Shown in pieces: positions 1,101-49,256 of a DNA stretch of 64,000 nucleotides. The first letter of the stretch is position 1; each line of letters starts with the position of its first letter. The translations under genes and the position numbers were made by a program. The stretch is from assembly GCA_964035545.1 (NCBI GenBank), contig OZ037771.1, positions 7,679,208 through 7,743,207 on the forward strand, read 5' to 3'. The notes under the pieces are model-generated. The model was not told where the DNA came from, searched no databases, and saw only the letters and a list, made by a program, of their open reading frames with translations. Origin of the DNA: Bugula neritina (Eukaryota; Animalia; Bryozoa).

Positions 1101-3973
1101 CTACCACTCTCCATAGAATAAAGGAAACAAGTAAATCTTCCTTCTACCAGTGAGAGTATTTATAACCACAGGAGTCTGTGTCACGTAAACAGTTGGATTT
1201 CTTTCTCTCCTTTTACCAGATATTTTCCTCACTCTGTGCTTCACCTTTAAATATTTTAAAACTAAATATATGCTGTTGTTTGCAGACATCAAAATTTTTA
1301 TTTTTTTAAAATATACTAGATGGAAAACTAGAACAAATGTTATTCAAATAAAATATCAAGAAATTCTGTTCTAACAGAGATAATAGAAAGGTATCAAATC
1401 TGAAAAAACATAATATAATGTGCAGGAAGCTTATAAAAAGTATTATATATGAAATAGAGAACTCAGTAAAGCTCATTCACTCTGCATCTTATACTATGAC
1501 TATATCAAACTGCGACTATACTATACTATTACATGACGATGTTATACTATGACTATACTATACTATGACTATACAATAACATGACTATAATATTACACTA
1601 TGACTATATTATACTATGACTATACTACACTATGACTATAATATACTATGACTATACTATGACTATACTATACTATAACTATATTATTCTATGACTATAT
1701 TATACTATTGTAGTAATTTGTGCAATTACTGAGCGTGAGTTATTTACTTGCGTATAGTTAGCTGGTTATTCTGCTATCAATTACTAGGGTAGCTGTCGAG
1801 TACTTATATTTATTATCCACAATAAAGCATAAAACAAACATCACATCAAATTATCCTATACAACAGTCAACTACTAACACATGTTACTACTTTAAGCCTC
1901 CGCTTACAACAACGTGATATAATGTTAATAACCCGGGAAGTGTCACGTGAATCGGAAGCATATCTTCCGGAGCTGCTAATTGGTTGCTACATAATGGTCT
2001 AAGTATTCCAAAAGTAGGGAGAGGACGATTCCCGTATTTGTACTTTGCACTACTCACTACACCATGACTATACTATACTATGACTATACTATACTATGAC
2101 TATATTGTACTATGACTATATTATACTATGACTATAATATACTATGACTATATTATACTATGGCTACATATTATATTATGACTATATTATACTATGACTA
2201 TACTATAACTAGTCACTACACCTATACTACTGTGACTACACCACACTGACTAATATGAAAACAGCCTCCTCTGAATAGGAATTGATGTCACAGGAAGTTA
2301 CTCACAATATCAAATAAGTCAGCAAGATCACGATGACAGCCATGTCTGTGTAAAGTCCTGACAAGTGTTCTTATCAATAATGAGCCACCGTAATCAAACT
2401 TCATAGAAGCACTGTCTATTAAAATAACACAATGAGTTGAATAGTAAATATTACACAGTGTAAAGTAACAGTGAGTGACACTATCCAGTAAAAACTGGTG
2501 AGAAATGCTAATTGAAAATTTGAAAATTGGGTTATTTCAGCAACGAAAGGTATATCTTGAGAAAGTCACATGACTGGTGGGTTTCAAAACTACTTGATGG
2601 TGATTGGGAGTTGTGGCCCATGGTTTAGGTGAAAAGGGATTAACCACACAGAATTGTTTGTAACTTAATCGTCTCACTTTAAATTAAAAACATTCAGCTA
2701 GAGAAAATACTTAGCCGAGTATTTTTAGGCAGCAGAGTATAAACTGTACAGACTAGTGTATCACAGATTACATGAAAACTAGATAACTGTAACTCACACA
2801 CAAATGGTCTATGTACTCAGTTCAGGTTTATGAAAGGTCATGTGATTAGACAGCACACCACAGCTGCTACCTGCTCTTTTTATTCTATTTGTTACTAATT
2901 TTCAATTGAATAATGGATTTGCGTTTAAAATTTTGGCCGATAACACCCTGAGCAAACTTTATTAATAAAATTATGACAATCCTAAAATGATGCAAGAAAT
3001 ATTCGTTTCTTTCGGTGGACAAAATTCTTACTTTCAAAGCATGAGTGAAGGATTAGAAGGTCGTCAACATCAAAGTTCCTCTGTCCAGTTGAAGTCTCAG
3101 CTTCCTGTTGATGAGTTTTGAGAGCAGAAAGTTCTGGTGAGGAGGAGTTGGTACTCTGTTGAATATTCTGCTCAGTTTGACTGACTGAGTTACCTGATTG
3201 ATTAGTAACACATGTGATATACCAACCAGTATTCTATGTATATGTATGAAGACTAGAGTATCATATAATACAGTATTACAATAGTATAATATATTCTTAC
3301 TCGTATCATATCTACACTCACCAACTCTGCACGCCTGAATAACCACAACTTTAGGCTTGCCGGCCATGTTGGGAAAATTTGTAGAGTTAATGAGACTGTA
3401 GATCTGTGTTAGATAGACTGGCTGTGAGTCAACTCCATGAATCATTCCATTAGCTCCGTGTGCAAACAGAAACAGGAAGAACATACCATAAGTGTTATGA
3501 ATCTCATCTCTTGTCTCTGATTGAATACACTGGAGTATCTCCTGTATATGAATATAACACAACACACACAATATACAAACTCAAGCAAGCATATTTGTCA
3601 CATCTCGTACTAGCCTCTAGGAAGTTAGCTCCGTGAAACAAAAGTTAGCCTAAAAGCGAAGATTCTGCATTTCCCGAACTTGATAACTGATTCAATAGAC
3701 AAGTCTGCAGGCTATTATAACAGTGAAGTGAGACATTAACCACTATTAACTAGTCACACTACGTGATAAGAAAAGGGAGACAACTACAAGTAAATAGAAA
3801 TATACCTCAGCTGTGAGATCCTTCTGCTTCACAACCTCAAATCTCATCTTCCTGAACAGAGCAAATGTGTTGTCAACATCATAACTAGAGCCAAGTCTCT
3901 GTCCTATATTTCTATACTTGTTGTTGTTTATAATCAGAGCTCTTCCTCTGAATGGACTCGTCATCTTGTATAT
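1101..3973 (-). CDS. Caspase domain of copy A (5 exons: p20, linker, p10)
   Basis: IYKMTSPFRGRALIINN...QRLGSSYDVD...FLFAHG...GKPKVVVIQACRVG, linker, DLLILHSCFENSASMKFDYGGSLLIRTL...VKHRV...QTPVVINTLTGRRKIYLFP. Confidence 0.92.
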
Positions 3974-6900
3974 CTGTAGATACAGACTATGTAATTAGTT
4001 TAGTACTTATTCATCTCATATTATAAGCAACTGAAGAATAATGAGTTAAAAATCATCCATGAGTAGACTAATATGGTTTCGGACATATTGTGTGGCTTTA
4101 ACACAGGTGCCAGCCTTAACAGTGCTGGGAAAATTGAAAGTACAACCTGGCAGTTTGTTCCATAGATTAGTGACCATCATTCATACTTACCGTACCGTAG
4201 GCCGTAACAGCAAATATCAGCCATTTTTACAAATGTCTGAGCTTCCTGTATGGCATTGTGGTACGTTAGGATCAAGCGCTGCTTGATTCAAAAATGTTGC
4301 GGCGGCTTTCTATTGGACAGAAAAACTTTTGCGTCAACGCTCAAGGAGAGCCAAGGCTATACAGAGATAACAGAGAGGAGAGCCAAGGCTATAGAGAGAC
4401 AATAGAGAAGAGAGCCAAGGCTATACAGAGATAACAGAAAAGAGAGCCAAGGCTATACAGAGATGACAGAGAGGAGAGCCAAGGCTATAGAATATTCAAC
4501 ATGACATACAAACCTCTGAAGTGTTGATGAAGAGAGACTTGATACTCTGATTAGTAGTAGGAACTAGTGTCAACTTGGTAAGATCTTCTGAAGTGGAGGT
4601 AGTACCTTCTTCTTCGTCCGAAACATCACTCAGTACATCATCAGTACCAACAGTATGAGTAGCAGCTCCACTGTGTCCAATATTATCTACATGTACAGGA
4701 AACATCACATAAACAGCTCACAGAAATGTAATGAAACCAGCAACCTACAGGAACAACTTCAACTGTCAATAACAAACATGGAGAATCAGAAAGGAAGAAA
4801 GTTATTCCTAATCAATTCACTAGAAGTAAGTTTAACTCAAGATACCTGGTGGCTTGTAGTTGGTCTTCACAAAGTCACTCAGTTTCTGCAGCTCATCTCC
4901 AGAAAGCTGAAAAACTGCAATATAAGTATGAATTATGGAGGTTGCTATTACTTGGACAGTACATCGCCATCTAAATATTCTATAAATAACCCAACAGAAG
5001 ACAATCATACTAACTTGGGTGTAAAAGACAAGCTGGGATATCTCTGTATTTTCCACATCTACCAGGTGATGAATCTGAAGTCATGGGAAGGGATTCACCA
5101 TACTTTGGAGGTCGACACCAGGGTGGGTTGATGAACCTCTTTGGTCGCTTTTCTCCAACCAATGGGCAGTGAGCACACAAGTTGATACAGGTAATTTTAC
5201 TTGCTCCCCACCATAAGTTGAAGTACTTTACGGTTGAATGAACTGAAGTGGTCAACATCCTCCAAGCATTGCCTATCTGTCGACAAGCAGACGTTACGGA
5301 GATACTGAGTTTACAAGATTTGTAGTCATGCAGCAACTGCAGGGTGTAAGCTTCGTCTCTCAGCTCCACTCCATTCTTTTTCACAGCTTTTTCACTACAA
5401 TCCTGGATATCATTGAGAAGTTTCACAGAAATCTGGTGGTAAACGTACTGAGGGGGAGTCAGGCCACCAAACAACATGTCTACTGACAGCTTTACAGGTT
5501 GTCTCCTGGAGGCAGTCAAGTCGGTGAAATACTCCTGTGAGCAGTATGGCATAGTGTAACTTAGTTTCTGGGATGAATCTTTCATCTCGAATAACAACTG
5601 GAAAGATTGCAGCAATGCGACTGCCACCTTCATCTTGTCACTCGTGGTGAAGCTGGTCTCTGCTATCAGAAGATGCTGAAACAGCTTCTCACCCATCCCG
5701 CCAGTTCGAACAAACTCTTGAGCCAAATTATTAAACTCTGTTTTATTTTCTGTCAACAGAATATCAAGTGAATCCTCTTCAATCGCTGACCGTCGATTGC
5801 TCCACACTTCCTTCTCGTGAGTGAAGAATACGTGGAGCAGCTTTGTAACCACGGAGATGTCGTAGAATACCAGAGACTGCAAACTCTCCCTATCCTGGTA
5901 CCAAATGAGATGGCCGCTGTTATGCATGTATGACAGAATCACTCTCAGCTGGTCTTCACTTTCCAACTTGCATTCAGTGACAAGTTGAAGCACTTCTGGA
6001 AATGTCTTGTAACTTCCATGGAATGAGTTGAATGTTTGAGCAACTTTTCTCCACAGAGTAGGCACCTTCTTCACGACTAGTTTACTATCAGATATGATAT
6101 GACTTCTCAGCTGATCAAACACCTCTTCATATTCATCACCCACAACATATATATCTTGTTCTTGAAACATCTCTTGGCACTGAAAAAGAAAAACTTGTGC
6201 AAAGGAGCTGGAATAATTCTCTTTAGAATTTTCTTCTAGTTGTATCAAATTGAATACACTTTTGGTGTGGAAAAAGAACAGCCTTTTTAGCTCTTCAAAT
6301 CCATCTGCACTGTAAGCATCTCGGTGAGTGAAAACCAGTTTGGGTGCTCTGAGCCCGGGATTGGCCAGGTACAGATGTGAGAGCCAATCAAAATATGTGC
6401 ATCGAACTGCTTCATTACCATTCACTTCTAAACAGAGCTCTTCAAACTCTTTTAGATTCACAACCACAATAGGAATACAGTTCTGTTTCAACGTGAACTG
6501 GTAGGTAGATTGGTATATTTTATTGCCACCAAAATCTATGAACTGAAGAACATTGTCACCAACCACTAACTTTTCCATATTGAAGACACGAGTTATTTCA
6601 TCTTCCACTGCATCAGCCGCTCTATTGGTTAATTTCCTTTTGCCATCTGATCCCACCAGCGTTTTAGTCAGGCTGGTTTTGCCAGACAGCGATCTACCCA
6701 CTAGAGCGACCGTAGCTTCAGAAACTTCTACATGACCACCAGAACTAAGATCGTTATAATACTGTCTGATAGCTGGTAGTCCGTCTACACACACAGCATA
6801 AGGTGGAGATGTGAGTGATACACACATGTAGCAGTACAGTTTAGTCAGATTAGGCATGTTGAGAAGTTGAGGAGTTAAAGATGTCATCTGAGAGTTGAGT

Positions 6901-9900
6901 GACAAGTCTAAGACTTGGAGATTCTTGAGTTGACCAACACTACCAAGTAAGTATACAGTATAACTTTAGTATTATTCTATATCAAATGTGTTATGTTTAA
7001 AAGTAAAACTTGATTGAATACATAATAGTTAGGTATCTAATATAGCCTGAGAGAGAAATAGTGTTTGACAGCACAACTGTTGCAAATGACTAGAACACAG
7101 GCCAAACTGAAAATATACCGATTACTTGACTTAACAGTAAAACTATTACAGTGAAAAAATAGAGTATTGAGTCACAATTTACAAATTGTGTTACATGTAA
7201 AAACTTTGGATCTACAATAATACAATTGTAATATATGGAAATTGTATTATTGCAAAACTATTAAAGCCATGCGTAAAAGTTTTGACACCCTCATACATTT
7301 TTGCAGCTTTGAAAAATGGCTAAACAGGATGTTCAATCTCCTAATGTTTCAAACAATTTAAAGTAATGCCATAATGTTACATATGGTATTGTGTGTTGTT
7401 TTGTAATCTAACTAAACACATTTAAACAATTTCAAATAGATAAACTATATTTGCTCTTAGAAGTTCCTGATATGAAGTAAATTTTCCTGTGTTGTTTACC
7501 CATTTAGGTTAATTTTTGCCTTCATACCATTGTACATTCAAGGCAAAATAGTGTATTGTGAATGAATATTTACAAAGTTTCAATCTGGGAACAAACATTG
7601 CGCAACTTAAAATGAAACTGTATTACAGACTGAGTAAGCAGCAATGACATAATATACCTCACAATTCTACTATTTTCTAAACTCAAACTTCACTTCATTA
7701 TGATGAGTGGTGGAAGACAAAATTTTAGTAGACAGCAGTCATCAAACTAAGAAGTGTAATGTTTTGAATGTTAACTGCATGCATTAGAGTTGTTTGTTAT
7801 TACTGCATGAATCAGATGATTTTTGGCAACTGTATGATGTCATATTCTGCATGTATATAACATGAAGATTTACAAATAAATAGTTAGTTTTAGCTCTCAA
7901 CGAAGTGTAGTCTCTACAGCATAAATATAATAACTGCAACTTAACACAACATAAAAAGAAGTACTAAAAGAAAGAAGTAATTAGGTTTGGTTTTGCAGCA
8001 TTACAGAAAACTGGGGAGTGAGTTTTGGAATGTTATGACATTGGTGATTTCATACTTATAATTGGCTCATGAAAATTACTACTCTATGGCAAGAACTGGT
8101 GAAATAAAAATTTCTGAAAGATAAATTCATGCTGCCAGCTTTGTGGAGATTATGCAGAAAAAAGCAACTTTAGAGAAAGTATAAAAAATTTACTTTCTAC
8201 CATACTTTCCTAGTAAAAGAGAGGAAGTTCAAGTACTTCAGTGGCCCATGCAAAAGTTAAAATAGATTTATAGACAATACAAAGAAAAGTAGCTGAGATA
8301 AAACCAACTGACATGGTCCATTTAGCTAGAACTGTCATCAATGCATGGTACAGGATGTGAGATAAACTACAAAATCAGCTGTGCTAGTGGAGAATATGTC
8401 AGCCTACTGCCTAGCAGTCATTGGTGCTAATAGTTACTCACTCACACTGAAACACTGACATGTTATGTGCAAGAATCTTTTCACACACAGAAGACATCCC
8501 ATTCTACAATCTTCTTCATTTTGCTAACCAAATAAAGAGAAAATTTCAATTCACGCATAATTATGTTTTAGTGCAAAATTTGATGGTAAAGGGCTTTTTA
8601 GCACTTTTCTATCAATAATCTCGTGTTATACAGTTGAAAATTATCTAGAGTTGTAGCTCAGCCAATCAGTTCCATTATATACATATTCAAATATTTTTAG
8701 CATGTAAAATTTCAGAAATTGCAAATAAAGATGTAAACTTGTAAACAATTTGGGGGTGTCAAAACTTTTACTCGTGACTGTATAATATATTGCAAGCTGC
8801 AATCAGATTTATTCAAACTTAGTAATCTCTATAGTTTATATAAAATAGATGATCATATATGATATCTTATATGTTTACATAATAGTAAAACATATATAAC
8901 TAATATAACTCACCTGTCTGATAATGTATGTAAGTGACAGTCCTCTAGACTTAACTGTGTAAGTGACTCCATCTTTGGTATCACCTCAGGTAATGTTCCT
9001 AACTTATTACCAGACACAACTAATGTGTGTAGATGTGTGAGTTGGGAGAGACTGTAATATACATACAATATACCATGACTATAATTATACAAGTTACAGG
9101 AATATTATATGGTAGATATGCGGTGACTCTAAATTATTATTGCCTTGCAGGTAAGAATTGTGTCAGTTATCTCTGTTTTAGTATTATATCCACTTCATCA
9201 CTAGAGAGTAGGTATGCTGGGACTTCTAGTATCACTTCTATTATACTTTATTATATGTTTACATAATAGTAGAACATATATAACTAATATAACTCACCTG
9301 TCTGGTAATATATGTAAGTCACAGTACTGTAGAAATATCTCTGTAAGTGACTCCATCTTTGGTATTACCTCAGGTAATGTTCCTAACTTATTCTCAGACA
9401 CATCTAATGTGTGTAGATGTGTGAGTTGGGAGAGACTGTAATATACATACAATATACCATGACTATAATTATACAAGTGACAGGTATCTTATATGATAGA
9501 TATGCAGTGAGTCTCAATTATTATTGCTTTGTAACTTGTAAGTATGAATTGGGTAAGTTATTAGCATTTGAGTATTATATTCACTTTATCACTAGAGAGT
9601 GGGTATGCTGGGACTACTAGTATTAATTTTATTCTACTTTATTATATATGTTTACATAATAGTAGACTATATATAACTAATATAACTCACCTGTCAGGTA
9701 ATGTGTGTAAGTAACAGTACTGTAGACGTAACTCTGTAAGTGACTCCATCTTTGGTATCATCTCAGGTAATGTTCCTAACTTATTATAGGACACATTTAA
9801 TGTGTGTAGATGTGTGAGTTGGGAGAGACTGTAATATACATACAATATACCATGACTATAATTATACAAGTTACAGGAATATTATGTCAAACATGTTATG

Positions 9901-19407: not shown

Positions 19408-19432
19408 AAAGTGAAACTGAAACAGTGAAAGT
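19408..19432. promoter_or_regulatory. Tandem IRF-binding/ISRE-like motif AAAGTGAAACTGAAACAGTGAAAGT upstream of the copy A CDS
   Basis: Matches GAAANNGAAA. Lies next to a candidate 5'-UTR donor (cttac, ~19461-19465) and ETS-like CCGGAA motifs (~19616, ~19639). Confidence 0.45.
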
Positions 19433-20789: not shown

Positions 20790-21390
20790 CGGTACAATAC
20801 TACACCACTATACTACTACCACGAGGCTTGAGGCTTTCTAATGACCGCATATCAATTCCAAGGCTATTCGTGTTCCTTTTGTAGGCGACCTTGAAACGCA
20901 ATCTGAGATGTCCCCAGGGATCTGGAGCTTTCCGCAAGTTTGCCATAAAGCAGATTTATAGGAATTCGGCCATCTTGCATTCTGCACACATGTCAAAGCT
21001 AGCGAAGACACCGCTGGCCCAGAAAGAATGAAGATTGTCGGCATCCAAGGACATTGCAAACTGTCAGTACTAGGAATTTTGTCTTGCCACTTGAGATGGT
21101 TAAATAAAAACTGCTTAGTATATTTTTCAGAGTGGCACAGGATGTCCAGGTTACACTGGAGTAGAGTAGTGTGGACAATATACATGCTTTGTAAACATGC
21201 ATCTTAGTGTTTGCTGACAGAGTGCTGTTTGTCCACACACTCTCTTGTGTAACTTGTACATTACTGTAGAAAGTGTGGCAATACTTGAGTTGATATCAGA
21301 CTGAATGGAGAGGGTTACACTGATGGTAGAGCCTGGAGACTGAACTCTGTCAACTGAGTTCAGCTCCTGACTTCCTACGCAGATACTTCA
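20790..21390 (-). mobile_element. Decayed RTE-like LINE 3' fragment
   Basis: TKMHVYKACILSTLLYSSVTW, with frameshifts. Confidence 0.6.
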
Positions 21391-42100: not shown

Positions 42101-45100
42101 CAGGTAATGTGTGTAAGTCACAGCCCCGTAGACGTAACTCTGTAAGTGACTTCATCTTTGGTATCACCTCAGGTAATGTTCCTAACTTATTACCAGACAC
42201 AACTAATGTGTGTAGATGTGTGAGTTGGGAGAGACTGTAATATACATACAATATACCATGACTATAATTACACAAGTTACAGGAATATTATGTTAAACAT
42301 ACTGTGAGTTTATTCTGAACTGTTGCTTTGTAAGTATAGATTGCCAGTTAATTGTGTGCAGTAAGGATAGCCAAAAGAGAATAGGCAGTTTCAACATGTG
42401 GCAAACATATAGAAAGAGTCCTGGTTGCGCAATGCTGACATCCTGTAGTTTGTAATGGAAAGTAAAAAGTATTCAAAAGATGGAAAACCTCTAGGTGTGG
42501 TGACGATGAAGAGAAGGGAAAGATCACAGAGAAAGCATACGGAGAGAAGAAATAACAGACAACAAATAAAATTGTAACAGCCAAAGAGAAGGCATATGGG
42601 ACAGTCTATGAATACTTACTTACAAGAGATCGAAGCAAAAAACCTATACACCTATATACCTATAAGAACCTGTATATACCTAGATACAAGTTGGTCAAAA
42701 CAAGAAAAAGACGATTATTGGATATTAATAGAATGAAATTGTGACTATAATCCATCAGAATGGAGACAGCATAAATGAGAATGTCAAGACACATCTTTAG
42801 GATAATTTATGAGGAGCATATGGAAAATGATGTGATTAGATAACAGGTTGGGGTGAAATGAATGTCTATAAACATGAGGAAAAACATCTGCAGTGGTATT
42901 GCGATGTTTGCAGCAAAGATGGTGATATTAGCTTCAACTTCAATGAATAAGAATCAATGGTATAATGGATATGAAGAATCTGACAAATTGAAACATACAA
43001 TATAATCCAACAAGAAAGGAGGGTGGTCTAGGCCAGTGGCTCCCAGCCTTTTTCCTACTATTCCCCTATTTAATAAATGTTGACTACCGTATTAATTTCC
43101 TCCCCCCCCCCTTTTCGTAAAGTAAAAAAGTTTCATGACTGACATAATGACAATATAGGATACGATACAATATGGTTTGTTCTATTAAAATATAATTATA
43201 ATAATTGTTATATTATCGTTATTATGTTATGCATGTATAGAACAAGGAGCAGTTCAATTTATAATGATTCTTTTGTGCCAGCTTGCATAAGTCTGCATTG
43301 CTGTTTTTGGCCATGCCCATCTTAATTCACTCTGCAGATTAGGGCAGTTTCTCTTCTCTTTGAGCTAATGAGAATCCTACCTCACTTGGAAAGATGGCGC
43401 TGGGTGGCACCAAAATTCTACTTTGTCAGCTATGTGTGGGGAGAGTTTGCTAGTTAAAACCCAAAATGATTTCAGGGGAAAATGGCACAAATGGAGAAGT
43501 AGGTAAGACTGGCACACTGATGGTAAACTTTTCCAAACCCCCACCCGGCCATTAAAATTGAACCCCAAACCAAAACCTCCAAATTGTATTCAAACCCAAA
43601 GTCCTCACCTCAAATCCCACCCCCAAACTCCAAACGCTCACCCCAATATTCAAAATGTGCCATTTTTACACACTTTTTAATTTTTGCCATTATTACCTGT
43701 GCCTTTTATACCAGACACCACCCACAATACATCAATTCAAGAAGAATTCAAATCAACCTTCATTGCTGAATTGTAAACCAACTCAATGAAATCCTCTTGT
43801 AATTCTTCTGGATTCTTTTAACAGAACGTTGCAATAGATCACATGTCAAGCTAAGAATCAAGCTCTTTCTTTTTGAGAGTTAGCTCAGAAAAATATTGTT
43901 AAAACTCCAATAAAAGTTCAGAGAGATCCGCAGAAGTTTTTTGGAGAAAGAACCTGAAACAAGTGGTGTTCGGTAAAAGTGGCACAGGTAGTAGTGGCGC
44001 AGGTAGTAGTGAAACAAATGGAAAATTGAGTAAAAATGGCACATTTTCAATATTAAAGTTGAAGATTTGGGGTTGGGAGTTCAAGATGGAGGGTTTCGGG
44101 TTCAGCATGGGGGGTTTGAGAAAATTTAACACCAGTGTGCCGGTTTTACTTAACATCAGAACAGGTTCTTTTCCTAAAATAGTTCATGGAGTGTGGGGAA
44201 AGACACCATATTTTTGATAGACTCCACAACTTTAGTGTAATTTTGAAAACATTGATGCTGCAATGCAAAGCAATGATAAGATTATTGCACTCCTGTATTT
44301 TTAGGTTCAAATTATTTAGTGTAGCAAATATAGTCACTAGGTTTGATACTTGTATTATGTATGTATGGTATATTATAGAGATTGGCTTGCTTAAAGTTGG
44401 CCTATTGGTTTTTGCAAACTTTTGACATCCATTCAAAGTAGTACAGAGAACAGTCAGGGTAGAGTAATTAATAAACACATTCATGTTGAAGTAAACCGAG
44501 ATTGCAGAATATAGTTTGGTTAAATAGATTAACTAAGATGAAGGTTTATAGATATGCATGTACATGTATGTAACATGCAAAAGCTCAAAAAAGCCTTCAA
44601 TAAACTGCGTGAATTTCTTAAAATCTAAATCCCCCCTAAAAAGCCCAAACTCTTCTCTAGGGGAGAATTCCCTCCAGGCTGGGAACCACTGGTCTAGGCA
44701 AAAAGGGTGGGAGGTTTGTTTAAGAATAATATCCACTTTATCACTGGAGAGTTGGTATGCTGGGACTACTATTATCATTTCTGTTATACTCTATTATATA
44801 TGTACATAGAATTAGAACACAGAGAGAATGTAATATACATACAACTTAAGTGATTAGAGTTTAGACCAAAGTAAATGTGGGAAGAAAGTGCTTTTTAAGA
44901 GATTAGATGATTCAGTGTAAGAAATTACTAAATCAATGCTAAAACAATTTTCCAATTGAGAATAATATTCAATTTATTACTAAATAGTTGGTATGCTGGA
45001 ACTACTAGTATCAGTTATATTATACTTTATTATATGTTTACATAATAGTAGAACATATATAACTAATATATCTCACCTGTCTGGTAATGTATGTAAGTCA

Positions 45101-48100
45101 CAGTGCTCTAGATGTAACTCTGTAAGTGACTCCATCTTTGGTATCACCTCAGGTAATGTTCCTAACTTATTCTCAGTAACATCTAATGTGTGTAGATGTG
45201 TGAGTTGGGAGAGACTGTAATATACATACAATATACCATGACTATAATTATACAAATGACAGGAATATTATATGGTAGATATGCAGTGAATATAATTTAT
45301 TATTGCCTTGTTAGTATGAATTGGGTAAGTTATTTGCATTTAAGAATTATATTTACTTATTACTAGAGAGTTGGTATGCTGGGACTACTAGTATCAGTTC
45401 TATTATACTTTATTATATGTTTACATAATAGCAGACAATATATAACTAATATATCTCACCTGTCAGGTAATGTATGTAAGTCACAGCCCCGTAGATGTAA
45501 CTTTGTAAGTGACTCCATCTTTGGTATCACCTCAGGTAATGTTCCTAACATATTACCAGACACAACTAATGTGTGTAGATGTGTGAGTTGAGAGAGACTG
45601 TAATATACATACAATAAACGATGACTATAATTATACAAGTTACAGGAATATTATGTTAAACATACTATGAGGTTATATAAGGCAAAGAACATAAATAAGG
45701 ACTGAGAAAAATACAGCTAACTGCCTGAGACTAGGAAGTTGGAACTTTAATGACCCTCCTAGCTGTTCCCAACTTCAAGCTTCTCGGCCACTGCCAATGG
45801 GCCATGCAATTTCCAGATGATGTAATGCTGTGCAATGGATAGGCAAATAGAGTGATAGGTTAGAAAAAGAGAAAAAAAAATTAGAAGATGCTGGACTAAA
45901 GCTGAGCAGAACCAAGACTGAGTACATGCTATCAGTGAGAATAGATAACAAGGAGAAGAAAAAATACTATGGCTGAGATAACTATAGTGATCTGCCTGAG
46001 ACTAGTGCTTTCAAATGTCTTGCAACTATAATAATCAGAATGGTGGGTTGTGGCCTTGAAGTAGCTAGGAGGATGGGAGTGGCTTGGGACAAGTGGAAGG
46101 ATCTCTCAGAAGTGCTGTGTGATAAGAAGGTATCAACTAAACATACAGTACTTCTGTTTAGAATATCCATTCTGTATGGTAATGAAACCTGGTCAGTTAC
46201 TCATGGGATAGAAGACGGGATGAAGTCAGTAGAAATGATACACAATTTTGGAATAACTTACGAGGAGCACATTGAACATGATGTGATTAGATAACAAACT
46301 GAGGTGAAACGAATATCTACAGACATGAGAAGACAACTGCAACAGTATGGACATGTTTGTAGGAAAAAAGACGATATTAGTCTCAATTACAATGTATAGA
46401 AGTCAATGGTAAACAGACACAAAGAAGAATCTGTCTAATGGAAACATACAATATAATCTAACAAGAAATGAGGGTGGTCTAGGCAAGAAAGGTGGGAGGT
46501 TTGTTGATGAATTGTATCCACTTTATCACTAGAGAGTTGGTATGCTGGGACTACTAGTATCAGTTCTATTATACTTTATTATATGTTTACATAATAGTAG
46601 CCAATATATAACTAATATATCTCACCTGTCTGGTAATGCATGTAAGTCACAGAACTGTAGATGTAACTCTGTAAGTGACTCCATCTTTGGTATCACCTCA
46701 GGTAATGTTCCTAACTTATTACGAGACACAACTAATTTGTGTAGATGTGTGAGTTGGGAGAGACTGTAATATACATACAATAAACCATGACTATAATTAT
46801 ACAGGTTACAGAAATATTATGTGAAACATGTTGTGAGTTTCTATTATTTCTGCTCTGCAAGTATGAATTGTGTCAGTTATTTGTGTTCATGAATTCTGTT
46901 CACTACTAGAGAGTTGGTATGCTGGGACTACTAGTATCAGTTTTATTCTACTCTTCTATATATTTACATATAATTAGAACACGGAGAGAATGTAGTATAC
47001 GTACAAAATTACCAATTAGACCAAAGTCAGTATGGGAAGAAAGTGTTTTTTAAGAGATTAGGTAATTTGGTGTAACAAATTGCTAAATCAAAAGCAGTTG
47101 CAATAATTTTCTTGTAAAGAGAATATTGAAGATGGGTTTTACTCTGTATGACCAGGTTTTGCTGCCAAGGCAGCCACCTGAGAATTACTGATTACAGAAG
47201 GAGAAAAAACTGGAGACAAAACAAGAGAGAATAAATCTTCGTAGTTTCAATTCACTTAAACTTGACTCTGGTGCAAGTAAATTGTGATGCAGTATAAAAC
47301 TGGCCATATGTGTGATAGTAGCTGTAGGGCAGGCAATAAAAGGTAGGCCTGAGTAATGAAAAGTCCAACAATTACTTTGAGATAATAAGAATAAAGTATT
47401 CACAGCCCTGGACTAAGTATAAAGTGATTATAAAAGCTGGGGATACAATTGAGATAATGCTGATAGGTAGGAAGGGAGATCTTATGTCAGAGTGATTCTA
47501 GATTATTACTCATCTGTATATATAAACTATAGCTGTGTTCAGAATATATTAAATATAGTTGATTGTTTTACTCCATATTTCATTACATCTAAAAATATAG
47601 AATTTCATTTCACAATTTCAGCCACTCAAACAACTTCTAAAGCACGGATAATACACTAGAAGGAACGGAGACAAAACTAATAGCAGTGAATACTTTGAAG
47701 AATATGAAACAAACCTAAGGCTACAAGCTGTGCAGGTAAGATTATATTTGATTTGTGATTTTCTCAATGAATATATAACTATCCATTTCTCTACTGGCAG
47801 AATAAACATTAAAGTTATCCCCACATGCAGGTAATCAGCTATGATGTGTGATTCACCAGAAGTCATTGTTGACCTCTTCCCCAGCAGCTTCAGCTCAAAC
47901 TAATATAATTCCATTTCAGTGCAATAGTGGAAAAAATTCAATACTCTTCAAATTCAATTTTTTATGGGTTTTTATGAATTTCTTTTTAGGGGTTTGGTTG
48001 AACATAATTTAGTTTGCACTTTTTCTCATCAAGCACACAGACTTTTCCAAATTTCCTAATAAATTCTACCCTTACTGCACTCGCTTTTATAATTCAAGGA

Positions 48101-49256
48101 GAACAGAATGATTACTCAGGTGCAGTAGAGATATGAAGGAATATTGCTGACATGCCATACAAGTATAACTCACCAAACATTTCAACATTTCAGTAAATAG
48201 TCAGTGAGTCACAACTGAAAATTCTACAGCAAGATGCACAGCTCAAGTATAAGTTATTATCCAAAGAGAAGTCATGCTCTAGAGTCTAACAAAGTAATGA
48301 TAGACTTACTATTCTAAACTGTTGATACTGGTTAGCCTTCGAATACGCAAGTTAGTTACAAGTGGAGCAAACTCTGTAACAGCAGGTGGCAGATCTCCCT
48401 CTATCTTTAGGTCAGTGATCACATGACCTGAACAAAGCTTTTTTATTTCCTCCTTTGAATAGAGTTCTGTAGGTTTGAGGAATAAGTCTTTGACATCAAT
48501 AGGCTCTATACCAGAGTGCCTCCACCAACAGCTGTATGTTTCTGCTAAAAACAAATGTTCTAGTTTTAGTATATACGTACCCAATAATACAGTAAATATA
48601 ACAGCATCCGGTTTATAGTACATTTATCTATGTTAAAATTCTAATAGTATACAGTGCATCAATTTACTGTTGAATTACTTATATAATAATTGAAAGTATA
48701 ATCCAGCAGTAAATATATTCCTATATTCAAAGAGAGAAACATACTAATTGTTGAGTCATCAACATGAAGATTAATAGGAATAATACTGAGACTTTCTTCA
48801 ACTTTTTATATCAGGTAGACTGAAAACAAATGAGAAACTTATCTAATAGACAATGCTGATGCTTCTATTTAAGATTTCACATACAACATGTTGATAAGAA
48901 AACACTAGCAAGTATAAGAAATGGCAAGAATTAGAAATAAACTTGTTTTTAATGTGATCCAAAAATTTATCAACAGCTTCATTAAGCTACATGCAGATAA
49001 AAGTCACAGAAAGTGTACAGAAACACCATAGTATAAATATAGTTCAGAGAAGAAACTTAAAGGGGGATAACAAAGTCTTTATTTTCACTTTCAAGTTGGA
49101 AGATGTAATTGAAACCTATTCAGGTATATTTAAAGAATACTGTATTCAGGTGAATATTTTACCATTCTCCAGACCAACTAATATTGTATACGGACCTGTT
49201 TGTGAAGCTGCTGCTGTTACTTCATCCTCAGAACTGGTTACAGAGTTGGTAGCCAT
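22046..49256 (-). CDS. ROCO-caspase copy B: LRR-Roc-COR-caspase fusion, ~1269 aa. Coding exons: 49256-49196, 48544-48310, four LRR exons (46763-46626, 45597-45460, 45214-45077, 42234-42097), 36609-34688, 34587-34519, 34359-34187, 33145-32978, 32440-32221, 32092-31931, 23705-23596, 22183-22046
   Basis: Paralogue of copy A with the same intron positions and phases. Exons sum to 3810 nt (1270 codons) with no internal stop. The large TE insertions all fall in introns. Confidence 0.87.
22505..23500. repeat. 16-bp minisatellite (ATACTATGACTATATT)n in the last intron of copy B
   Basis: Longer array than in copy A, interrupted by a SINE. Confidence 0.9.
22690..22908 (-). mobile_element. tRNA-derived SINE inserted in the minisatellite
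   Basis: Minus strand begins GGGAGCAGCCGTAGTCTAGGGGTTAGAGC...GGGCTCGACCCC (A/B-box-like head). Confidence 0.65.
24206..25075 (+). CDS. gag: Gypsy Gag
   Basis: 289-aa ORF after the PBS with CCHC knuckle CWGCGSGGHFLRSC. Confidence 0.92.
   Translation: MADEVVDAPRQEPAAIEEDHIGGPALPMDRYHLRAPTFSGEEDVEQFITEFSDVADICGWPNRVTLIQLRLCLTGPAKPYGISQNVGDIFEAIRARFGLTARDARVQLQSLRRNPKTNLREHATVVERLAQVAYSDLPADGRQSLALDAFLQSINNLGLKQHLLVAEVETMERALRLGNAYFQADSASRPGATVQQVGADDVSTSSTKTAVQVAAAAADESSLTTSLIRELLAEFRQLRQQATAERPKRSSVAVADRRGPVCWGCGSGGHFLRSCPRGSGRRLNSDGPR
25027..29601 (+). CDS. pol: Gypsy Pol (protease-RT-RNase H-integrase), -1 frame relative to gag
   Basis: LDTG protease, YLDD RT, DTDAS RNase H, HHCC and DDE integrase; open frame with no stop. 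Confidence 0.96.
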   Translation: MPPRQWEAVKQRRPTVTSAYRGPEFNPPRQRLRPPPHRVRRPPSPEWQVPRRVSRPQGPPIPPAWALKNRFEGLLDEGVNDEWEHNRDFPRLPTRASVREFTRPPVCERDRDVPCPPMQRRRPPRNRKAQVHPQFHAHEVSPQETNRSVSAQPYGSSYFLPGKIAGKAATFLLDTGCTTNLLSRRLFDTLSAKDRASLEPYEGERGTLADGSCIPFYGVIQLTGRVRDQMISETFIVSQLKEDAILGMPFLKRHRCYIDFSKSAVVMAGRELACVDRFGRPLVGGVQVVQRCTVPGRSRATVRCRVNCREISELGVVEGALGGVQLANSLNRLDERREFLVQCVNPFTEPVELPAGSLVGKFHSVQEEDVGPALETAGGARGVPTRDGRGPVPEHVAELYEDACDGCESKRERLEMARLLSEYKDVFSCGDHDMGLTETVRHEIPLAAGMVPIRQPTRRLGPEKEREVSRQVQDLLNRDLIEPGHGAWSSPVVLVRKKDGSWRFCVDYRRLNSVTIQDAYPLPRIDESLDALAGSKFFSTLDLLSGYWQVPLSPEAQDKAAFITRDGLWKWKVLPFGLTSAPATFQRLMEQVLSGLHWKTLLIYLDDVIVISPDFDTHVSRLREVFDRLRAANLKLKPSKCALLQREVKYLGHVVGRDGVATDPEKVRAVRDWAVPVDLSELRAFLELVGYYRQYIPDFAGIAQPLNRLTAKGVRWQWTQAEQKAFDHLKDRLVEAPILAYPDPAKEYILDTDASNHNVGAVLSQVQDGREVVVAYYSKALSAPEKNYCTTRRELLAVVKAVKHFRPYLYGRTFRLRTDHASLIWLCRRAEPSSQVARWLEILAEFSYRIEHRPGKKHGNADGLSRRQADGCKQCQNIERRDGGPPRSDVEAQLGKAGVYSWEEGQLLSESPNKAVNNLHANPTLLRNVRELCRLQSTLPGVVADLVRAKKEGRRPSEAEQRVKSTEFKYFCDRWDSLRFNSDGLLTITLAVGTNRSERERVVCPSALRRELIWDTHKQAHAGASRVIRCLQLQWFWPGMTRDVRLRVRKCEVCQASKHGRPTETAGRRRLHAGRPWQVVAVDLVGPMPTTAKGNNWILVLTDHFTRWSDALAIPDASAPSVARALDQQVFCYFGLPEQIHSDQGAQFQSQLMSDLCRMWGVNQSRTTPYHPQGNGVVERNNRMLGDSLRSLLIGRSQEEWDLVLPQIMRAYRSTPHSSTLETPNFLMLGRETRVPEHVTYHVPNPESNVHDYVDKLVKRMGTAHEVLREQQWQVRSGDSDDPPLYKVGDWVWMTSHRRRRGQAAKLQPKFVGPYCVIEVMPNHTYKVERSGQVSVQNEARLKPHWASPDAAGQAPPLLEPARRPPMRGRPMAYREIEEILPDQDGAADAPADQPQPPPPQEEEVDTPEDLSEPAPPPVEPVDRPIVPDEMAIPQNHEEEAAGGGPPVLVDPPVLATPPVVEESPVVANSPVQLERSQRTRAPPSYLKDFLCDAVEKHPAAIIKEIWGDEQLRVAFPRYKETQL
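30300..30487. repeat. ~59-bp tandem repeat x3 in the Gypsy 3' region
   Basis: aagattcctgcatgaagt recurs at ~59-nt spacing. Confidence 0.85.
33381..33693. mobile_element. Palindromic MITE-like insert (right half deleted in copy A, ~4172-4340)
   Basis: Inverted arms acccatcattc...aaatatcagccatttt / aaaatggctgatattt...gaatgaagggt. Confidence 0.55.
33828..34163. repeat. 32-bp tandem repeat, ~11 copies (orthologous to 4346-4490)
   Basis: Direct repeats visible in sequence. Confidence 0.9.
34688..36609 (-). CDS. Large exon of copy B: last LRRs + Roc GTPase + COR
   Basis: ORF 34683..36581, highly similar to the copy A exon and 3 nt shorter. Confidence 0.92.
38279..38950 (+). CDS. LINE ORF1 (coiled-coil + nucleic-acid binding region)
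   Basis: ATG MPPKTR at 38279; coiled-coil segment; IIVKF, KIYINEYL and FKFAW motifs. Confidence 0.8.
   Translation: MPPKTRTDSTASDIDATMKEILQQLKKINNRIEIIEEKVDSIESSLNYHTEWKEVKEDMDQIKNTIPALKGKMEEHEIEKANKMAEIQGVPHHQDESLKDIVTKLAELNDVHLTPVNIDMVYRNKSKKSIIVKFIQTHICQDFIRSFKAKKNKSLTSKELGYKTASKIYINEYLLYPTRQLFHKVREYKKENNFKFAWTINQKVFLRETEGSKAIHIKSLSDL
39007..41868 (+). CDS. LINE ORF2 (AP endonuclease + reverse transcriptase)
   Basis: HCNIRSL, ISET, GDINID, SDHFP; IDFSKAFDT, GVPQGSILGP, FADDT. Confidence 0.96.
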   Translation: MELCNTSKHFTIDDLNNISCNDFRVLHCNIRSLRKNFNNLLELLSIVNCSFHVIAISETFLYSNECNYFPISNYSYIGSCRDSRAGGCGIYVHSGLAVIEKLEPLIEGSEAISLLVAGLDEVPLRITAIYRQPSSDTGRFTDDLHNFLHSISHTDHNHIITGDINIDILKQESDSYTDLLHQYSYTHLIEHPTRTTQTSSSCIDHIAINFYSSNVISGTLDKDISDHFPVFAFFENLVQPKSQTFKRRSYRSLCDIQLKQEFQNCDWSKLVFKHNDPIVAYRNFLNETSHIFNKLAPFQERTFHFNRKKVNNWITDRLKKEIHKKDRLFSQHKAFPYSPKLKQAYIKQRNKVSTLIKQAKYNYYDKLISNQADSRKLWNTINNACGRKSTSPSFPVKLKADSEIITHHTEIANYINNYFTNIGKNLADKIPSVPEIPVNAKDCPSFYFQLVDKNRVLTELKNLNENKSEGLDLIPARLVKQSATYLCQPLTHIINLIIKSGVIPNELKVAKILPFYKNKGDKLLCSNYRPISILPVYSKILEKIICKQLNEHLNLHKILSVSQFGFQQKKGAQDALIKFSDQSFKALNDSSVILGIFIDFSKAFDTINHNILLQKLRDYNFDSHSISLIQNYLTNRTQHVIIENSISNSLHITCGVPQGSILGPVLFLLYINDLATHCPLFDTILFADDTNLFWKSKDLNADIGNINSSLNKVNNWCIANKLTLNLTKTNYIIVKNYQKNFVLNSTIHIDNIPLSPSSEIKFLGVVIDINLNWCAHINSLRTQLNKVTGMIYLASKFLPYKALILLYNSLINSKLTYCLEAWGNAPKTHLNKLLLIQKRIIRIIFHKSPTEHTSPLFIKAEILPIDLLYIYRLCLLGHSAYYTPSHTKQPPNYLTRHSELSLPLPLSNSAAGHRQVSYQMSSNWNKLPLTLRHHQSFATFKILLKKHLLKSLT
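42097..42234 (-). CDS. LRR cassette exon B4 (VVSGN / ELRLRGCD)
   Basis: Same unit; the LINE tail lies about 10 nt inside the downstream intron. Confidence 0.87.
43034..44691. mobile_element. Non-autonomous hAT element with a nested inverted-repeat element (~43515-44140)
   Basis: TIR CAGTGGCTCCCAGCCT / AGGCTGGGAACCACTG; perfect 8-bp TSD GTCTAGGC (43026-43033, 44692-44699); empty site visible at ~46477. Confidence 0.88.
45077..45214 (-). CDS. LRR cassette exon B3 (DVTEN / ELHLEHCD)
   Basis: Same 138-nt phase 2-2 unit. Confidence 0.9.
45460..45597 (-). CDS. LRR cassette exon B2 (VVSGN / KLHLRGCD)
   Basis: Same 138-nt phase 2-2 unit. Confidence 0.9.
46626..46763 (-). CDS. LRR cassette exon B1 (KLVVSRN / ELHLQFCD); not in the ORF track
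   Basis: Translated by hand: LSQLTHLHKLVVSRNKLGTLPEVIPKMESLTELHLQFCDLHALPD, with cag|T acceptor and AG|gtgag donor. Confidence 0.9.

What the first reader, a model, noticed from the sequence alone, without database searches (positions are those of the whole stretch)
1101..49256. Tandem LRR-Roc-COR-caspase genes: a candidate single-chain sensor/switch/protease immune receptor
Seen: two paralogues in which LRR, Roc, COR and caspase exons join in one frame. The ROCO exon's apparent stop falls just past a GT donor (CCAA|gttag), and two linker exons (69 and 173 nt) lead in phase into the caspase. Established: ROCO proteins (LRRK2, MFHAS1, DAPK1) use Roc-COR as a nucleotide-regulated dimerisation module, and initiator caspases are activated by induced dimerisation, normally through CARD/DED adaptors. 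Inference: LRR ligand binding could gate COR dimerisation and directly activate the fused caspase, an adaptor-free analogue of an NLR inflammasome. I do not know of a characterised ROCO-caspase fusion, but I cannot search databases to confirm novelty.
Basis: partly seen in the sequence, partly recalled or inferred. Interest (0 to 1): 0.95.

Follow-up and report, generated by a model that had tools for sequence, protein, structure and literature searches.

The report
Bryozoan LRR-Roc-COR-caspase fusion genes
Two neighbouring genes of a moss animal (bryozoan) each join a variable leucine-rich-repeat surface, a Roc-COR GTPase switch and a complete caspase in one spliced protein; they belong to a family of at least 62 such genes that looks like an undescribed class of animal single-chain cell-death or immune receptors.

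Summary
On the minus strand there are two paralogues, copy A (17757-1101) and copy B (49256-22046). In both, the Roc-COR exon ends at a phase-1 GT donor one codon before its apparent stop. Two linker exons (69 and 173 nt) and five caspase exons follow, all GT-AG and in frame.

- **RNA support:** contigs from three studies carry the Roc-COR/linker-1, linker-1/linker-2, linker-2/caspase and internal caspase junctions.
- **Domains:** the Roc-COR exon folds (pLDDT 86) like LRRK1, LRRK2 and Chlorobium Roco. The protease exons match CED-3 and caspases 2, 8 and 3, and keep the His and Cys catalytic residues.
- **Family:** 62 of 68 scored Roc-COR exons in this 216-Mb genome have a same-strand caspase exon 1-3 kb downstream. 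RefSeq models of the bryozoan Watersipora carry the same fusion.
- **Selection:** LRR residues are under strong diversifying selection. The GTPase, linker and caspase are under purifying selection.

- Copy B's last two caspase exons lie 8 kb away, behind a retrotransposon.
- The pair is part of a six-gene array.
- A bacterial Roc-COR-CHAT protease has been characterised, and bacterial LRR-Roc-COR-caspase architectures have been described.

The mechanism is still inference. This scan has already noted the family many times elsewhere in this genome.

The parts
17664..17757 (-). Copy A exon 1 (ATG at 17757, 94 nt, leaves phase 1)
   Evidence: ATG followed by an open frame and a GTAAAA donor. Conserved with copy B. 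Not checked with RNA.
16735..16969 (-). Copy A exon 2 (235 nt, phase 1 to 2), start of the LRR region
   Evidence: AG acceptor and GTAGGT donor; the frame fits exon 1 and the phase-2 cassettes. Inferred, no RNA check.
14490..14627 (-). Copy A LRR cassette exon 1 (138 nt, two LRRs, phase 2-2)
   Evidence: AG/GTGAGA sites.
14124..14261 (-). Copy A LRR cassette exon 2
13740..13877 (-). Copy A LRR cassette exon 3
9691..9828 (-). Copy A LRR cassette exon 4
9298..9435 (-). Copy A LRR cassette exon 5
8914..9051 (-). Copy A LRR cassette exon 6
5015..6939 (-). Copy A Roc-COR exon (1925 nt): last two LRRs, Roc GTPase, COR-A, COR-B with a Cys/His tail. Ends in phase 1 at CAA|GTTAGT.
   Evidence: Pfam. 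AF2 model. Foldseek hits to LRRK1, CtRoco and LRRK2. Acceptor. RNA joint 4913/5015.
4846..4914 (-). Copy A linker exon L1 (69 nt, phase 1 to 1)
   Evidence: RNA joints to both neighbours.
4514..4686 (-). Copy A linker exon L2 (173 nt, phase 1 to 0), acidic and Ser/Thr-rich, no Pfam match
   Evidence: RNA joints 4686/4846 and 3975/4517.
3806..3973 (-). Copy A caspase exon C1 (start of p20)
   Evidence: Pfam. Aligns to caspase-3 from its internal YKM motif, including the Arg that aligns with the Arg of caspase-3's SRSG motif. RNA joints.
3322..3541 (-). Copy A caspase exon C2 (catalytic His in FAHG, catalytic Cys in QACRV)
   Evidence: Pfam. PDB sequence hits to CED-3 and caspases 2, 8 and 3. 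RNA joints.
3032..3193 (-). Copy A caspase exon C3 (intersubunit linker and start of p10)
   Evidence: RNA joints 3191/3320 and 2415/3032.
2306..2415 (-). Copy A caspase exon C4 (p10)
   Evidence: RNA joints.
1101..1244 (-). Copy A caspase exon C5 (end of p10, with stop at 1103-1101)
   Evidence: RNA joint 1240/2302 (cut +4).
49163..49256 (-). Copy B exon 1 (ATG at 49256)
48310..48544 (-). Copy B exon 2 (235 nt)
   Evidence: GTAAGT donor.
46626..46763 (-). Copy B LRR cassette exon 1
45460..45597 (-). Copy B LRR cassette exon 2
45077..45214 (-). Copy B LRR cassette exon 3
42097..42234 (-). Copy B LRR cassette exon 4
34688..36609 (-). Copy B Roc-COR exon (1922 nt)
   Evidence: 91% amino-acid identity to copy A.
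34519..34587 (-). Copy B linker exon L1
   Evidence: Its first letters match the loose end of an X4 contig at the Roc-COR donor.
34187..34359 (-). Copy B linker exon L2
32978..33145 (-). Copy B caspase exon C1
32221..32440 (-). Copy B caspase exon C2 (catalytic His and Cys)
31931..32092 (-). Copy B caspase exon C3
23596..23705 (-). Copy B caspase exon C4, 8.2 kb downstream of C3
   Evidence: AG/GT sites and phase are kept. Splicing across the long intron was not checked with RNA.
22046..22183 (-). Copy B caspase exon C5 (with stop)
24206..29601 (+). Ty3/gypsy retrotransposon ORFs lying antisense inside copy B's C3-C4 intron. Not part of the protein; it explains the split caspase.
   Evidence: Pfam (protease, RT, RNase H, integrase). 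GC 55%.
38231..41868 (+). LINE-type retroelement (ORF1, then endonuclease-RT ORF2) lying antisense inside copy B's intron between the last cassette and the Roc-COR exon
   Evidence: Pfam.

Best explanation
Each copy is one gene for a protein of about 1,300-1,375 residues. From N to C it has:
- a short N-terminal region;
- an array of LRRs, built mostly from interchangeable 138-nt exons;
- a Roc GTPase with COR-A and COR-B;
- a roughly 80-residue acidic, probably disordered linker;
- a complete animal-type caspase (p20, intersubunit linker, p10).

What is shown: the exon structure, the splicing of Roc-COR to the caspase, the ROCO fold, intact GTPase motifs, the caspase His/Cys dyad, purifying selection on switch and protease, diversifying selection on the LRR surface, and a family of at least 62 such genes.

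What is inferred: the protein is a single-chain receptor. The hypervariable LRR face binds a foreign or non-self ligand. This changes the nucleotide or oligomeric state of Roc-COR. The tethered caspase domains are then brought or released into an active dimer, as for initiator caspases. They process themselves at Asp sites in the intersubunit linker and cleave death or inflammatory substrates. This would be an adaptor-free counterpart of an NLR inflammasome or apoptosome.

My odds:
- real fused protein: about 0.93;
- immune or non-self death-receptor role: about 0.6;
- the particular 'COR dimerisation switches the caspase on' step: about 0.35.
For: Splicing and frame:
- every exon from the ATG to the stop is in phase in both copies.
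- spliced RNA contigs from runs X1, X4 and X14 (three studies).

Conservation of the fusion:
- a GT donor sits one base after the last conserved Pro codon in six paralogues that are 36-100% identical.
- the order Roc-COR, linker, C1 to C5 is colinear in four divergent loci.
- 62 of 68 Roc-COR exons have a same-strand caspase exon at a median of 1.5 kb downstream.
- Watersipora RefSeq proteins of 1,386-1,419 residues hold LRR, Roc/COR and Peptidase_C14 (5e-40).

Domains:
- ROCO fold: LRRK1 3.6e-20, CtRoco 2.3e-18, COR alone 5.7e-9.
- GTPase motifs conserved: GxxxxGKT, DxxG, THxD.
- Animal caspase.
- the Met of C1 aligns to an internal motif of caspase-3, so it is not an independent start.

Selection:
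- cassette variable columns pN/pS 9, other columns 0.25.
- last LRRs dN/dS about 12, Roc 0.19, linker 0.10, caspase 0.13.

Context:
- only 1 NACHT and 4 CARD matches in the genome.
- a Lingula LRR-Roc-COR-CARD protein links ROCO to caspase recruitment in a related phylum.
Against: - No functional data of any kind.
- The RNA evidence is assembled contigs at 93% likeness. Some may come from close paralogues, and no single molecule was seen from ATG to stop.
- Splicing of exon 2 to the first cassette, and of copy B across its 8.2-kb transposon-bearing intron, was not checked.
- An isoform that retains the first linker intron and ends at the Roc-COR stop is not excluded.
- From my own knowledge of Chlorobium Roco, GTP binding favours the monomer. 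The direction of any dimer switch therefore cannot be assumed.
- Copy A seems to have Lys where caspases have the p10 Arg of the Asp pocket (read by eye, not confirmed), so its specificity may differ.
- The variable LRR columns were picked after seeing the data.
Confidence: 0.6

Rival explanations
1. Two separate genes: a ROCO gene that ends at the TAG at 5010 (34683 in copy B), and a short-prodomain caspase gene downstream. The joined reading would be a read-through or assembly artefact.
For: The Roc-COR open frame does end in a stop one codon after the proposed donor. C1 contains an ATG at 3964. The RNA evidence is contigs, not single molecules.
Against: - Spliced contigs join the Roc-COR end to L1 and L2, and L2 to C1, at canonical sites in three runs.
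- The donor position and phase are conserved in paralogues down to 36% identity, while the read-on stop is not.
- The ATG codes the Met of a YKM motif that is internal in caspase-3.
- At least 10 Watersipora RefSeq models are fused.
- 62 of 68 loci keep the pairing.
Confidence: 0.04
2. A real fusion protein, but used for colony allorecognition (fusion or rejection between colonies) rather than for pathogen sensing. The LRR variation would track polymorphic self markers, and the caspase would kill cells at contact zones.
For: The animal is colonial. The family is large, sits in tandem arrays and has hypervariable LRR faces. PMC8195603 lists allo-incompatibility in bryozoans among the contexts of apoptosis.
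Against: There are no polymorphism data between individuals and no expression data at contact zones. At least 62 paralogues spread over many chromosomes look more like an innate receptor repertoire than a histocompatibility locus.
Confidence: 0.15
3. A real fusion protein, with a developmental or housekeeping role in regulated cell death, for example the cyclic degeneration of feeding zooids. No foreign ligand would be involved.
For: Spliced contigs appear in many unrelated RNA runs, which suggests constitutive expression. The caspase and GTPase are under purifying selection.
Against: Diversifying selection focused on LRR concave-face positions, together with a lineage-specific expansion to at least 62 genes including some pseudogenised members, is not expected of a housekeeping regulator.
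Confidence: 0.1
4. A sensor-protease, but with a different switch. Roc-COR would be a constitutive dimer or scaffold and the LRR would fold back to block the caspase. Alternatively, activation would need higher-order oligomers or cleavage within the acidic linker that frees the caspase.
For: Foldseek aligns the model to autoinhibited LRRK2 and to the compact LRR-Roc-COR form of CtRoco. The linker exon L2 is rich in Asp, Glu, Ser and Thr.
Against: Nothing here discriminates between this and the best explanation. It differs from the best explanation only in the activation step.
Confidence: 0.3

Closest known systems
Bacterial LRR / AP-GTPase (Roc) / COR proteins with C-terminal effectors including caspase (Kaur et al., eLife 2021, PMC8195603), and the Runella Roc-COR-CHAT protease that cleaves a bacterial gasdermin (Johnson et al., bioRxiv 10.1101/2021.06.07.447441)
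   Same: Same order of modules: variable LRRs, Roc, COR, then a clan-CD cysteine protease in one chain. The proposed logic is also the same, namely direct coupling of recognition to a death protease without an adaptor.
   Different: Those are prokaryotic. The tested example carries a CHAT domain, not a caspase proper. Here the protease exons are closest to CED-3 and caspases 2, 8 and 3, the gene has about 16 exons, and the fusion looks like an independent animal invention.
MFHAS1/MASL1, the animal LRR-Roc-COR protein after which RefSeq names the Watersipora homologues
   Same: LRR-Roc-COR core without a kinase.
   Different: MFHAS1 has no protease. It is a single-copy gene (my own knowledge), not a family of 60 or more. 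Orthology was not tested here.
LRRK1, LRRK2 and Chlorobium tepidum Roco (solved ROCO structures)
   Same: Best structural matches of the Roc-COR exon model over about 650 columns.
   Different: 12-16% sequence identity. The output domain there is a kinase, or none.
NLR inflammasomes and the Apaf-1 apoptosome
   Same: A repeat sensor, a nucleotide switch and caspase activation by induced proximity.
   Different: Those use STAND ATPases (NACHT, NB-ARC) and recruit caspases through CARD or PYD adaptors. Here the switch is a Ras-like GTPase and the caspase is covalently attached. The genome shows only 1 NACHT and 4 CARD matches.
Lingula anatina XP_013417012.1 (LRR-Roc-COR-A-COR-B-CARD), found here
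   Same: A lophophorate LRR-ROCO whose C-terminal output points at caspases.
   Different: It ends in a recruitment domain, not in the caspase itself, and is only distantly similar (E 3e-15 to the window exon).
Brown-algal LRR-ROC-COR genes with one LRR per exon and exon shuffling (Teng et al. 2024, PMC11378527)
   Same: ROCO genes whose LRRs sit in phase-symmetric cassette exons under diversifying selection, proposed as immune receptors.
   Different: No protease domain. One LRR per exon there, two per 138-nt exon here. An unrelated lineage.

Membership tests
ROCO proteins | Roc (Ras-like) GTPase domain with intact nucleotide-binding motifs | tested here: met
   Pfam Roc 29.4 bits against a cut-off of 27. 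The P-loop GxxxxGKT, DFGG and THxD are conserved or invariant across 45 homologues.
ROCO proteins | COR domain directly C-terminal to Roc | tested here: met
   Pfam COR-A 36.3 bits against a cut-off of 35.3. The AF2 model (pLDDT 86) matches LRRK1, CtRoco and LRRK2 over Roc plus COR, and the isolated CtRoco COR domain (3dpt) at 5.7e-9.
ROCO proteins | GTP binding and hydrolysis, and COR-mediated dimerisation | not testable with these tools
   Needs biochemistry.
Caspases (peptidase family C14A) | Catalytic His and Cys in the p20 subunit | tested here: met
   Exon C2 holds the His (FAHG) and the Cys (QACRV). Peptidase_C14 6e-13. Aligns to CED-3 and caspases 2, 8 and 3. Identical in both copies.
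Caspases (peptidase family C14A) | p20, intersubunit linker and p10 in one chain | tested here: met
   Exons C1-C5 are colinear with residues 1132-1416 of Watersipora P0044. They are open and in phase.
Caspases (peptidase family C14A) | Residues of the P1-Asp pocket (two Arg, one Gln) | tested here: inconclusive
   The p20 Arg aligns to the Arg of caspase-3's SRSG motif, and the Gln precedes the catalytic Cys. By eye, the p10 position is Lys in copy A and Arg in copy B. The 36-residue exon gave no PDB alignment.
Caspases (peptidase family C14A) | Proteolytic activity after Asp | not testable with these tools
   Needs an enzyme assay.
NLR / STAND receptors | NACHT or NB-ARC ATPase domain | tested here: not met
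   No such domain in any exon. The switch is a Roc GTPase. The protein may work like an NLR but is not one.
MFHAS1 orthologues | Orthology to vertebrate MFHAS1 | not tested
   Only the RefSeq naming of the Watersipora homologues. No tree was built.
Bacterial LRR-AP-GTPase-COR-caspase conflict proteins | Common descent of the whole fusion with the bacterial proteins | tested here: inconclusive
   The domain order is the same (PMC8195603). However, the protease exons are closest to animal caspases, and the gene is intron-rich. No phylogeny was made.

The most novel reading that the evidence does not exclude
Cheilostome bryozoans, which in this genome show almost no NACHT or CARD matches, may have built their main intracellular non-self surveillance from a family of at least 60 single-chain ROCO-caspase receptors. 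Their LRR surfaces would be diversified by cassette-exon gain, loss and positive selection. That would be an independent animal invention of an adaptor-free 'inflammasome in one polypeptide', driven by a Ras-like GTPase instead of a STAND ATPase.
Probability: 0.4. Interest if true: 0.85.

Novelty: new variant of a known kind. Interest (0 to 1): 0.72.

Why it matters
If these proteins work as read, they would show three things.
- A Roc-COR GTPase can serve as the switch of a death receptor in animals. That bears on the long-unclear physiological output of ROCO proteins such as MFHAS1, DAPK1 and LRRK2.
- Caspase activation can be hard-wired to a sensor without CARD or DED adaptors.
- Animals have evolved a large innate receptor repertoire outside the TLR and NLR classes.

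The fusion also gives a tractable system. One polypeptide with a protease read-out could be used to study how nucleotide state and COR contacts are transmitted to an output domain.

Tried and rejected
- **Alternative acceptor.** I suspected an acceptor 8 nt inside L1, which would shift the frame, because of an 8-letter loose end in run X4. I rejected this: the letters are simply the copy-B form of the L1 start.
- **Complex prediction.** Complex prediction on two copies of the COR-B part (174 residues) returned 'no answer' with an uncertain fold. It is not evidence either way.
- **Word-based search.** The search for homologous proteins with P0043 residues 428-1413 found only the query itself. 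The word-based search is too insensitive for this family.
- **Short exon search.** A PDB sequence search with the 36-residue C4 exon found nothing.
- **Amphioxus lead.** I could not confirm it. No held paper has amphioxus, caspase and Roc-COR together, and PMC2493400 is not held.
- **Literature.** Searches for a bryozoan or other animal ROCO-caspase found nothing relevant.
- **Joined model.** Exons were searched one by one by reference, and in scripts only the one or two carried bases were passed between exons to check phase.
Full report
**What is in the window.** The sequence is eukaryotic, about 35% G+C, and holds a GC-rich block at 24-30 kb. On the minus strand, Pfam finds the following:
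- an LRR tail, a Roc GTPase and a COR-A domain in the 651-codon open stretch 5013-6965;
- Peptidase_C14 in 3749-3994 and 3056-3580;
- LRRs in a series of near-identical short open stretches further upstream.

A second set of the same pieces lies at 31.9-49.3 kb.

**Gene models.** I read the junctions from the sequence. I followed the reading phase exon by exon, passing only the one or two carried bases between exons.

| Exon | Copy A | Copy B |
|---|---|---|
| Exon 1 (starts at the ATG) | 17757-17664 | 49256-49163 |
| Exon 2 | 16969-16735 | 48544-48310 |
| LRR cassettes (138 nt, phase 2) | six: 14627-14490, 14261-14124, 13877-13740, 9828-9691, 9435-9298, 9051-8914 | four: 46763-46626, 45597-45460, 45214-45077, 42234-42097 |
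| Roc-COR | 6939-5015 | 36609-34688 |
| L1 | 4914-4846 | 34587-34519 |
| L2 | 4686-4514 | 34359-34187 |
| C1 | 3973-3806 | 33145-32978 |
| C2 | 3541-3322 | 32440-32221 |
| C3 | 3193-3032 | 32092-31931 |
| C4 | 2415-2306 | 23705-23596 |
| C5 (with stop) | 1244-1101 | 22183-22046 |

All sites are AG/GT and every phase fits. Neither copy has a stop before the terminal one. Summing the exons gives about 1,375 codons for copy A and 1,280 for copy B.

The Roc-COR exon ends CAA|GTTAGT in phase 1, and the TAG at 5012-5010 lies inside the intron.

Copy B's last two caspase exons were found only by searching with copy A's exon peptides. They sit 8.2 kb from C3 because an antisense Ty3/gypsy element (24206-29601) occupies that intron. 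A LINE (38231-41868) occupies the intron between the last cassette and the Roc-COR exon.

The exon 1, exon 2 and first-cassette joins are inferred from phase only.

**RNA evidence.** Eighteen public runs hold parts of the locus. I laid four of them on 1101-7000, a stretch of 5,900 letters, within the operators' limit. Run X15 covers introns as well and behaves like DNA. The others give spliced contigs with CT..AC ends, that is GT..AG on the gene's strand:
- **X1, 302-nt contig:** 63 letters of the Roc-COR end from 5015, one variant letter, L1 (4913-4846) and L2 (4686-4517).
- **X14 (oligo-dT), 272-nt contig:** L2, L1 and a 31-letter overhang that is the Roc-COR exon end with three mismatches, so it comes from a paralogue or allele.
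- **X4 and X1:** L2 joined to C1, with a net skip of 540 nt, which equals intron 3974-4513.
- **Other joints seen:** 3540/3805, 3191/3320, 2415/3032 and 1240/2302. With the stated cut offsets these are exactly C1/C2, C2/C3, C3/C4 and C4/C5.
- **X4, 8-letter loose end at 5015:** this matches the copy-B form of the L1 start. Both gene types therefore appear to be spliced the same way.

These are assembled contigs at 93% likeness, not single molecules. They show that the junctions exist in RNA libraries of three studies. They do not show a full-length transcript.

**Is the fusion conserved?** The window's genome has 216 Mb in 321 contigs.
- The Roc-COR exon finds 68 scored matches (of 136 candidates) at 36-100% identity.
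- Exon C2 finds 119 matches.
- For 62 of the 68 Roc-COR exons, a C2-like exon lies on the same strand 1-3 kb downstream, median 1.5 kb.
- The window pair belongs to an array of six on contig C7 (7.58-7.72 Mb). Two members of that array carry a stop inside the Roc-COR exon.
- In four divergent loci that I fetched (36-65% identity), the order Roc-COR, linker, C1 to C5 is colinear.
- In all six genes examined (those four loci plus copies A and B), a GT donor (GTGAGT, GTATGT or GTTAGT) follows one base after the last conserved Pro codon. The read-on frame stops at varying distances.

A conserved phase-1 donor at the end of homology argues for a conserved splice, not a conserved terminus.

**Relatives elsewhere.** An exhaustive profile search gave 1,265 hits.
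- Most top hits are about 650-700-residue open frames from metagenome or Logan contigs, which is the single large exon.
- The long hits are RefSeq proteins of the cheilostome bryozoan Watersipora subatra. XP_067948342.1 has 1,413 residues and XP_067947674.1 has 1,419. Both hold LRRs, COR-A (and, in shorter paralogues, Roc) and a full Peptidase_C14 domain at 5e-40 and 1.5e-36.
- These proteins align colinearly to the window.
- A second search found eight more Watersipora caspase models of 853-1,835 residues, seven of them with LRRs, and nothing from other phyla at that sensitivity.
- I infer that the window's organism is a bryozoan, from these relatives and from the kinds of runs that hold it. 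It is not named by any tool.
- More distant ROCO hits include a Lingula protein with LRR-Roc-COR-A-COR-B-CARD and a bacterial LRR-Roc-COR-TIR.

**Membership.**
- **ROCO fold:** an AlphaFold model of the Roc-COR exon, built on 45 homologues, has pLDDT 86 and pTM 0.86. Its best solved matches are LRRK1 (3.6e-20), the LRR-Roc-COR of Chlorobium tepidum Roco (2.3e-18), LRRK2, and the isolated COR domain (5.7e-9).
- **GTPase motifs:** by sequence only the Roc part reaches the Chlorobium and Methanosarcina Roco proteins. The P-loop, DxxG and THxD motifs are conserved.
- **Caspase:** the protease exons match CED-3 and caspases 2, 8, 3 and 9. The His and Cys are present.
- **The ATG in C1:** the Met of C1 aligns to the internal YKM of caspase-3. 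This removes the idea that it is an independent start.
- **Linker:** exons L1 and L2 have no family match and are acidic and Ser/Thr-rich.

**Selection.**
- Across the ten cassette exons of the window, eight columns carry three or more residues: 11, 14, 32, 34, 36, 37, 39 and 42. Six of them (11, 14, 34, 36, 37, 39) are the x positions of LxxLxLxxN. These eight columns show pN/pS of about 9, against 0.25 for the other 37 columns. The columns were chosen after seeing the data.
- Between copies A and B, dN/dS values are as follows. Counts are small for the short parts.

| Region | dN/dS |
|---|---|
| Two LRRs at the start of the Roc-COR exon | about 12 |
| Roc | 0.19 |
| COR | about 0.5 |
| Linker exons | 0.10 |
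| C1-C3 | 0.13 |
| C4 | 0.12 |

- Exons are 98-99% identical between the copies where the long neighbouring introns are 78-89% identical.

This is the pattern of a receptor with a fast-evolving recognition face and conserved signalling parts.

**How it probably works.** The parts and their order are shown. The mechanism is inferred:
1. The LRR face recognises a ligand.
2. The Roc-COR switch changes its nucleotide or oligomeric state.
3. The tethered caspases are allowed to dimerise, process themselves and cleave substrates.

Which way the switch goes cannot be said. In Chlorobium Roco, GTP favours the monomer (my own knowledge). The one complex prediction gave no verdict.

The genome gave only one NACHT and four CARD matches in a six-frame search. 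That search loses sensitivity on split exons. The result is consistent with this family filling the place of NLRs, but it does not prove it.

**What is known.**
- PMC8195603 describes bacterial proteins with rapidly evolving LRRs, an AP-GTPase (Roc) and COR, followed by one of at least 24 effector domains, caspase among them.
- The Runella gasdermin-activating protease is labelled Roc-COR-CHAT, and its catalytic residues were tested.
- Brown-algal LRR-ROC-COR genes have exon-shuffled LRRs.
- I found no paper on an animal ROCO-caspase.

The animal family is therefore annotated in RefSeq but, as far as the held literature goes, undescribed and untested. The same family has been noted many times by this scan in other parts of this genome.

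**Limits.** The retroelements were only described.

Noticed in passing
window 24206-29601 (+): Ty3/gypsy-type retrotransposon with two long open frames (289 and 1,524 codons; protease, RT, RNase H, integrase). G+C is 55% against about 35% around it. It lies antisense in copy B's C3-C4 intron.
   Followed up: partly
window 38231-41868 (+): LINE-type element. ORF1 has a Baculo_FP_2nd match, and a 953-codon ORF2 holds endonuclease and RT. It lies antisense in copy B's intron upstream of the Roc-COR exon.
   Followed up: partly
window 51160-55212 (+): A second Ty3/gypsy-type polyprotein frame (1,350 codons; zinc knuckle, RT, RNase H, integrase), upstream of copy B.
   Followed up: partly
window 5013-5180 (-), residues about 597-637 of the Roc-COR exon: Cys597, His599, Cys600 and Cys637 are invariant in 45 homologues, in a small beta-rich tail after COR-B. 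This may be a zinc site that Pfam's COR models do not cover.
   Followed up: no
window 2306-2415 (-) and 23596-23705 (-): At the p10 position that by eye corresponds to the second Arg of the caspase Asp pocket, copy A has Lys and copy B has Arg. C4 and C5 are also the most diverged caspase exons between the copies (92% and 84% nucleotide identity).
   Followed up: partly
window 4056-4449 and 1692-2282: Intron stretches with summed contig depths up to 56,000 in the DNA-like run X15, and up to 37,700 in X4, against roughly 0-2,300 across the rest of the stretch. They look like high-copy repeats. 4340-4500 also holds a short tandem repeat.
   Followed up: no
G000:C7:7662087-7664039 and G000:C7:7606547-7608496: Two of the six members of the same tandem array carry one in-frame stop (TGA, TAA) in the Roc-COR exon. 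They are likely pseudogenes or sequencing errors.
   Followed up: no
P0116 (Lingula anatina XP_013417012.1): A brachiopod LRR-Roc-COR-A-COR-B protein that ends in a CARD. It may be an adaptor-using counterpart of the bryozoan fusion.
   Followed up: partly
whole genome G000: A six-frame search finds only one NACHT match (E 6.5e-6) and four CARD matches. These are lower bounds on intron-split genes, but they are far fewer than the 62 or more ROCO-caspase loci.
   Followed up: partly
window 9882-13739: A 3.9-kb gap splits copy A's cassette array into three plus three exons. It holds plus-strand open frames (11203-11475, 12003-12365). I did not examine it; it may be another insertion.
   Followed up: no
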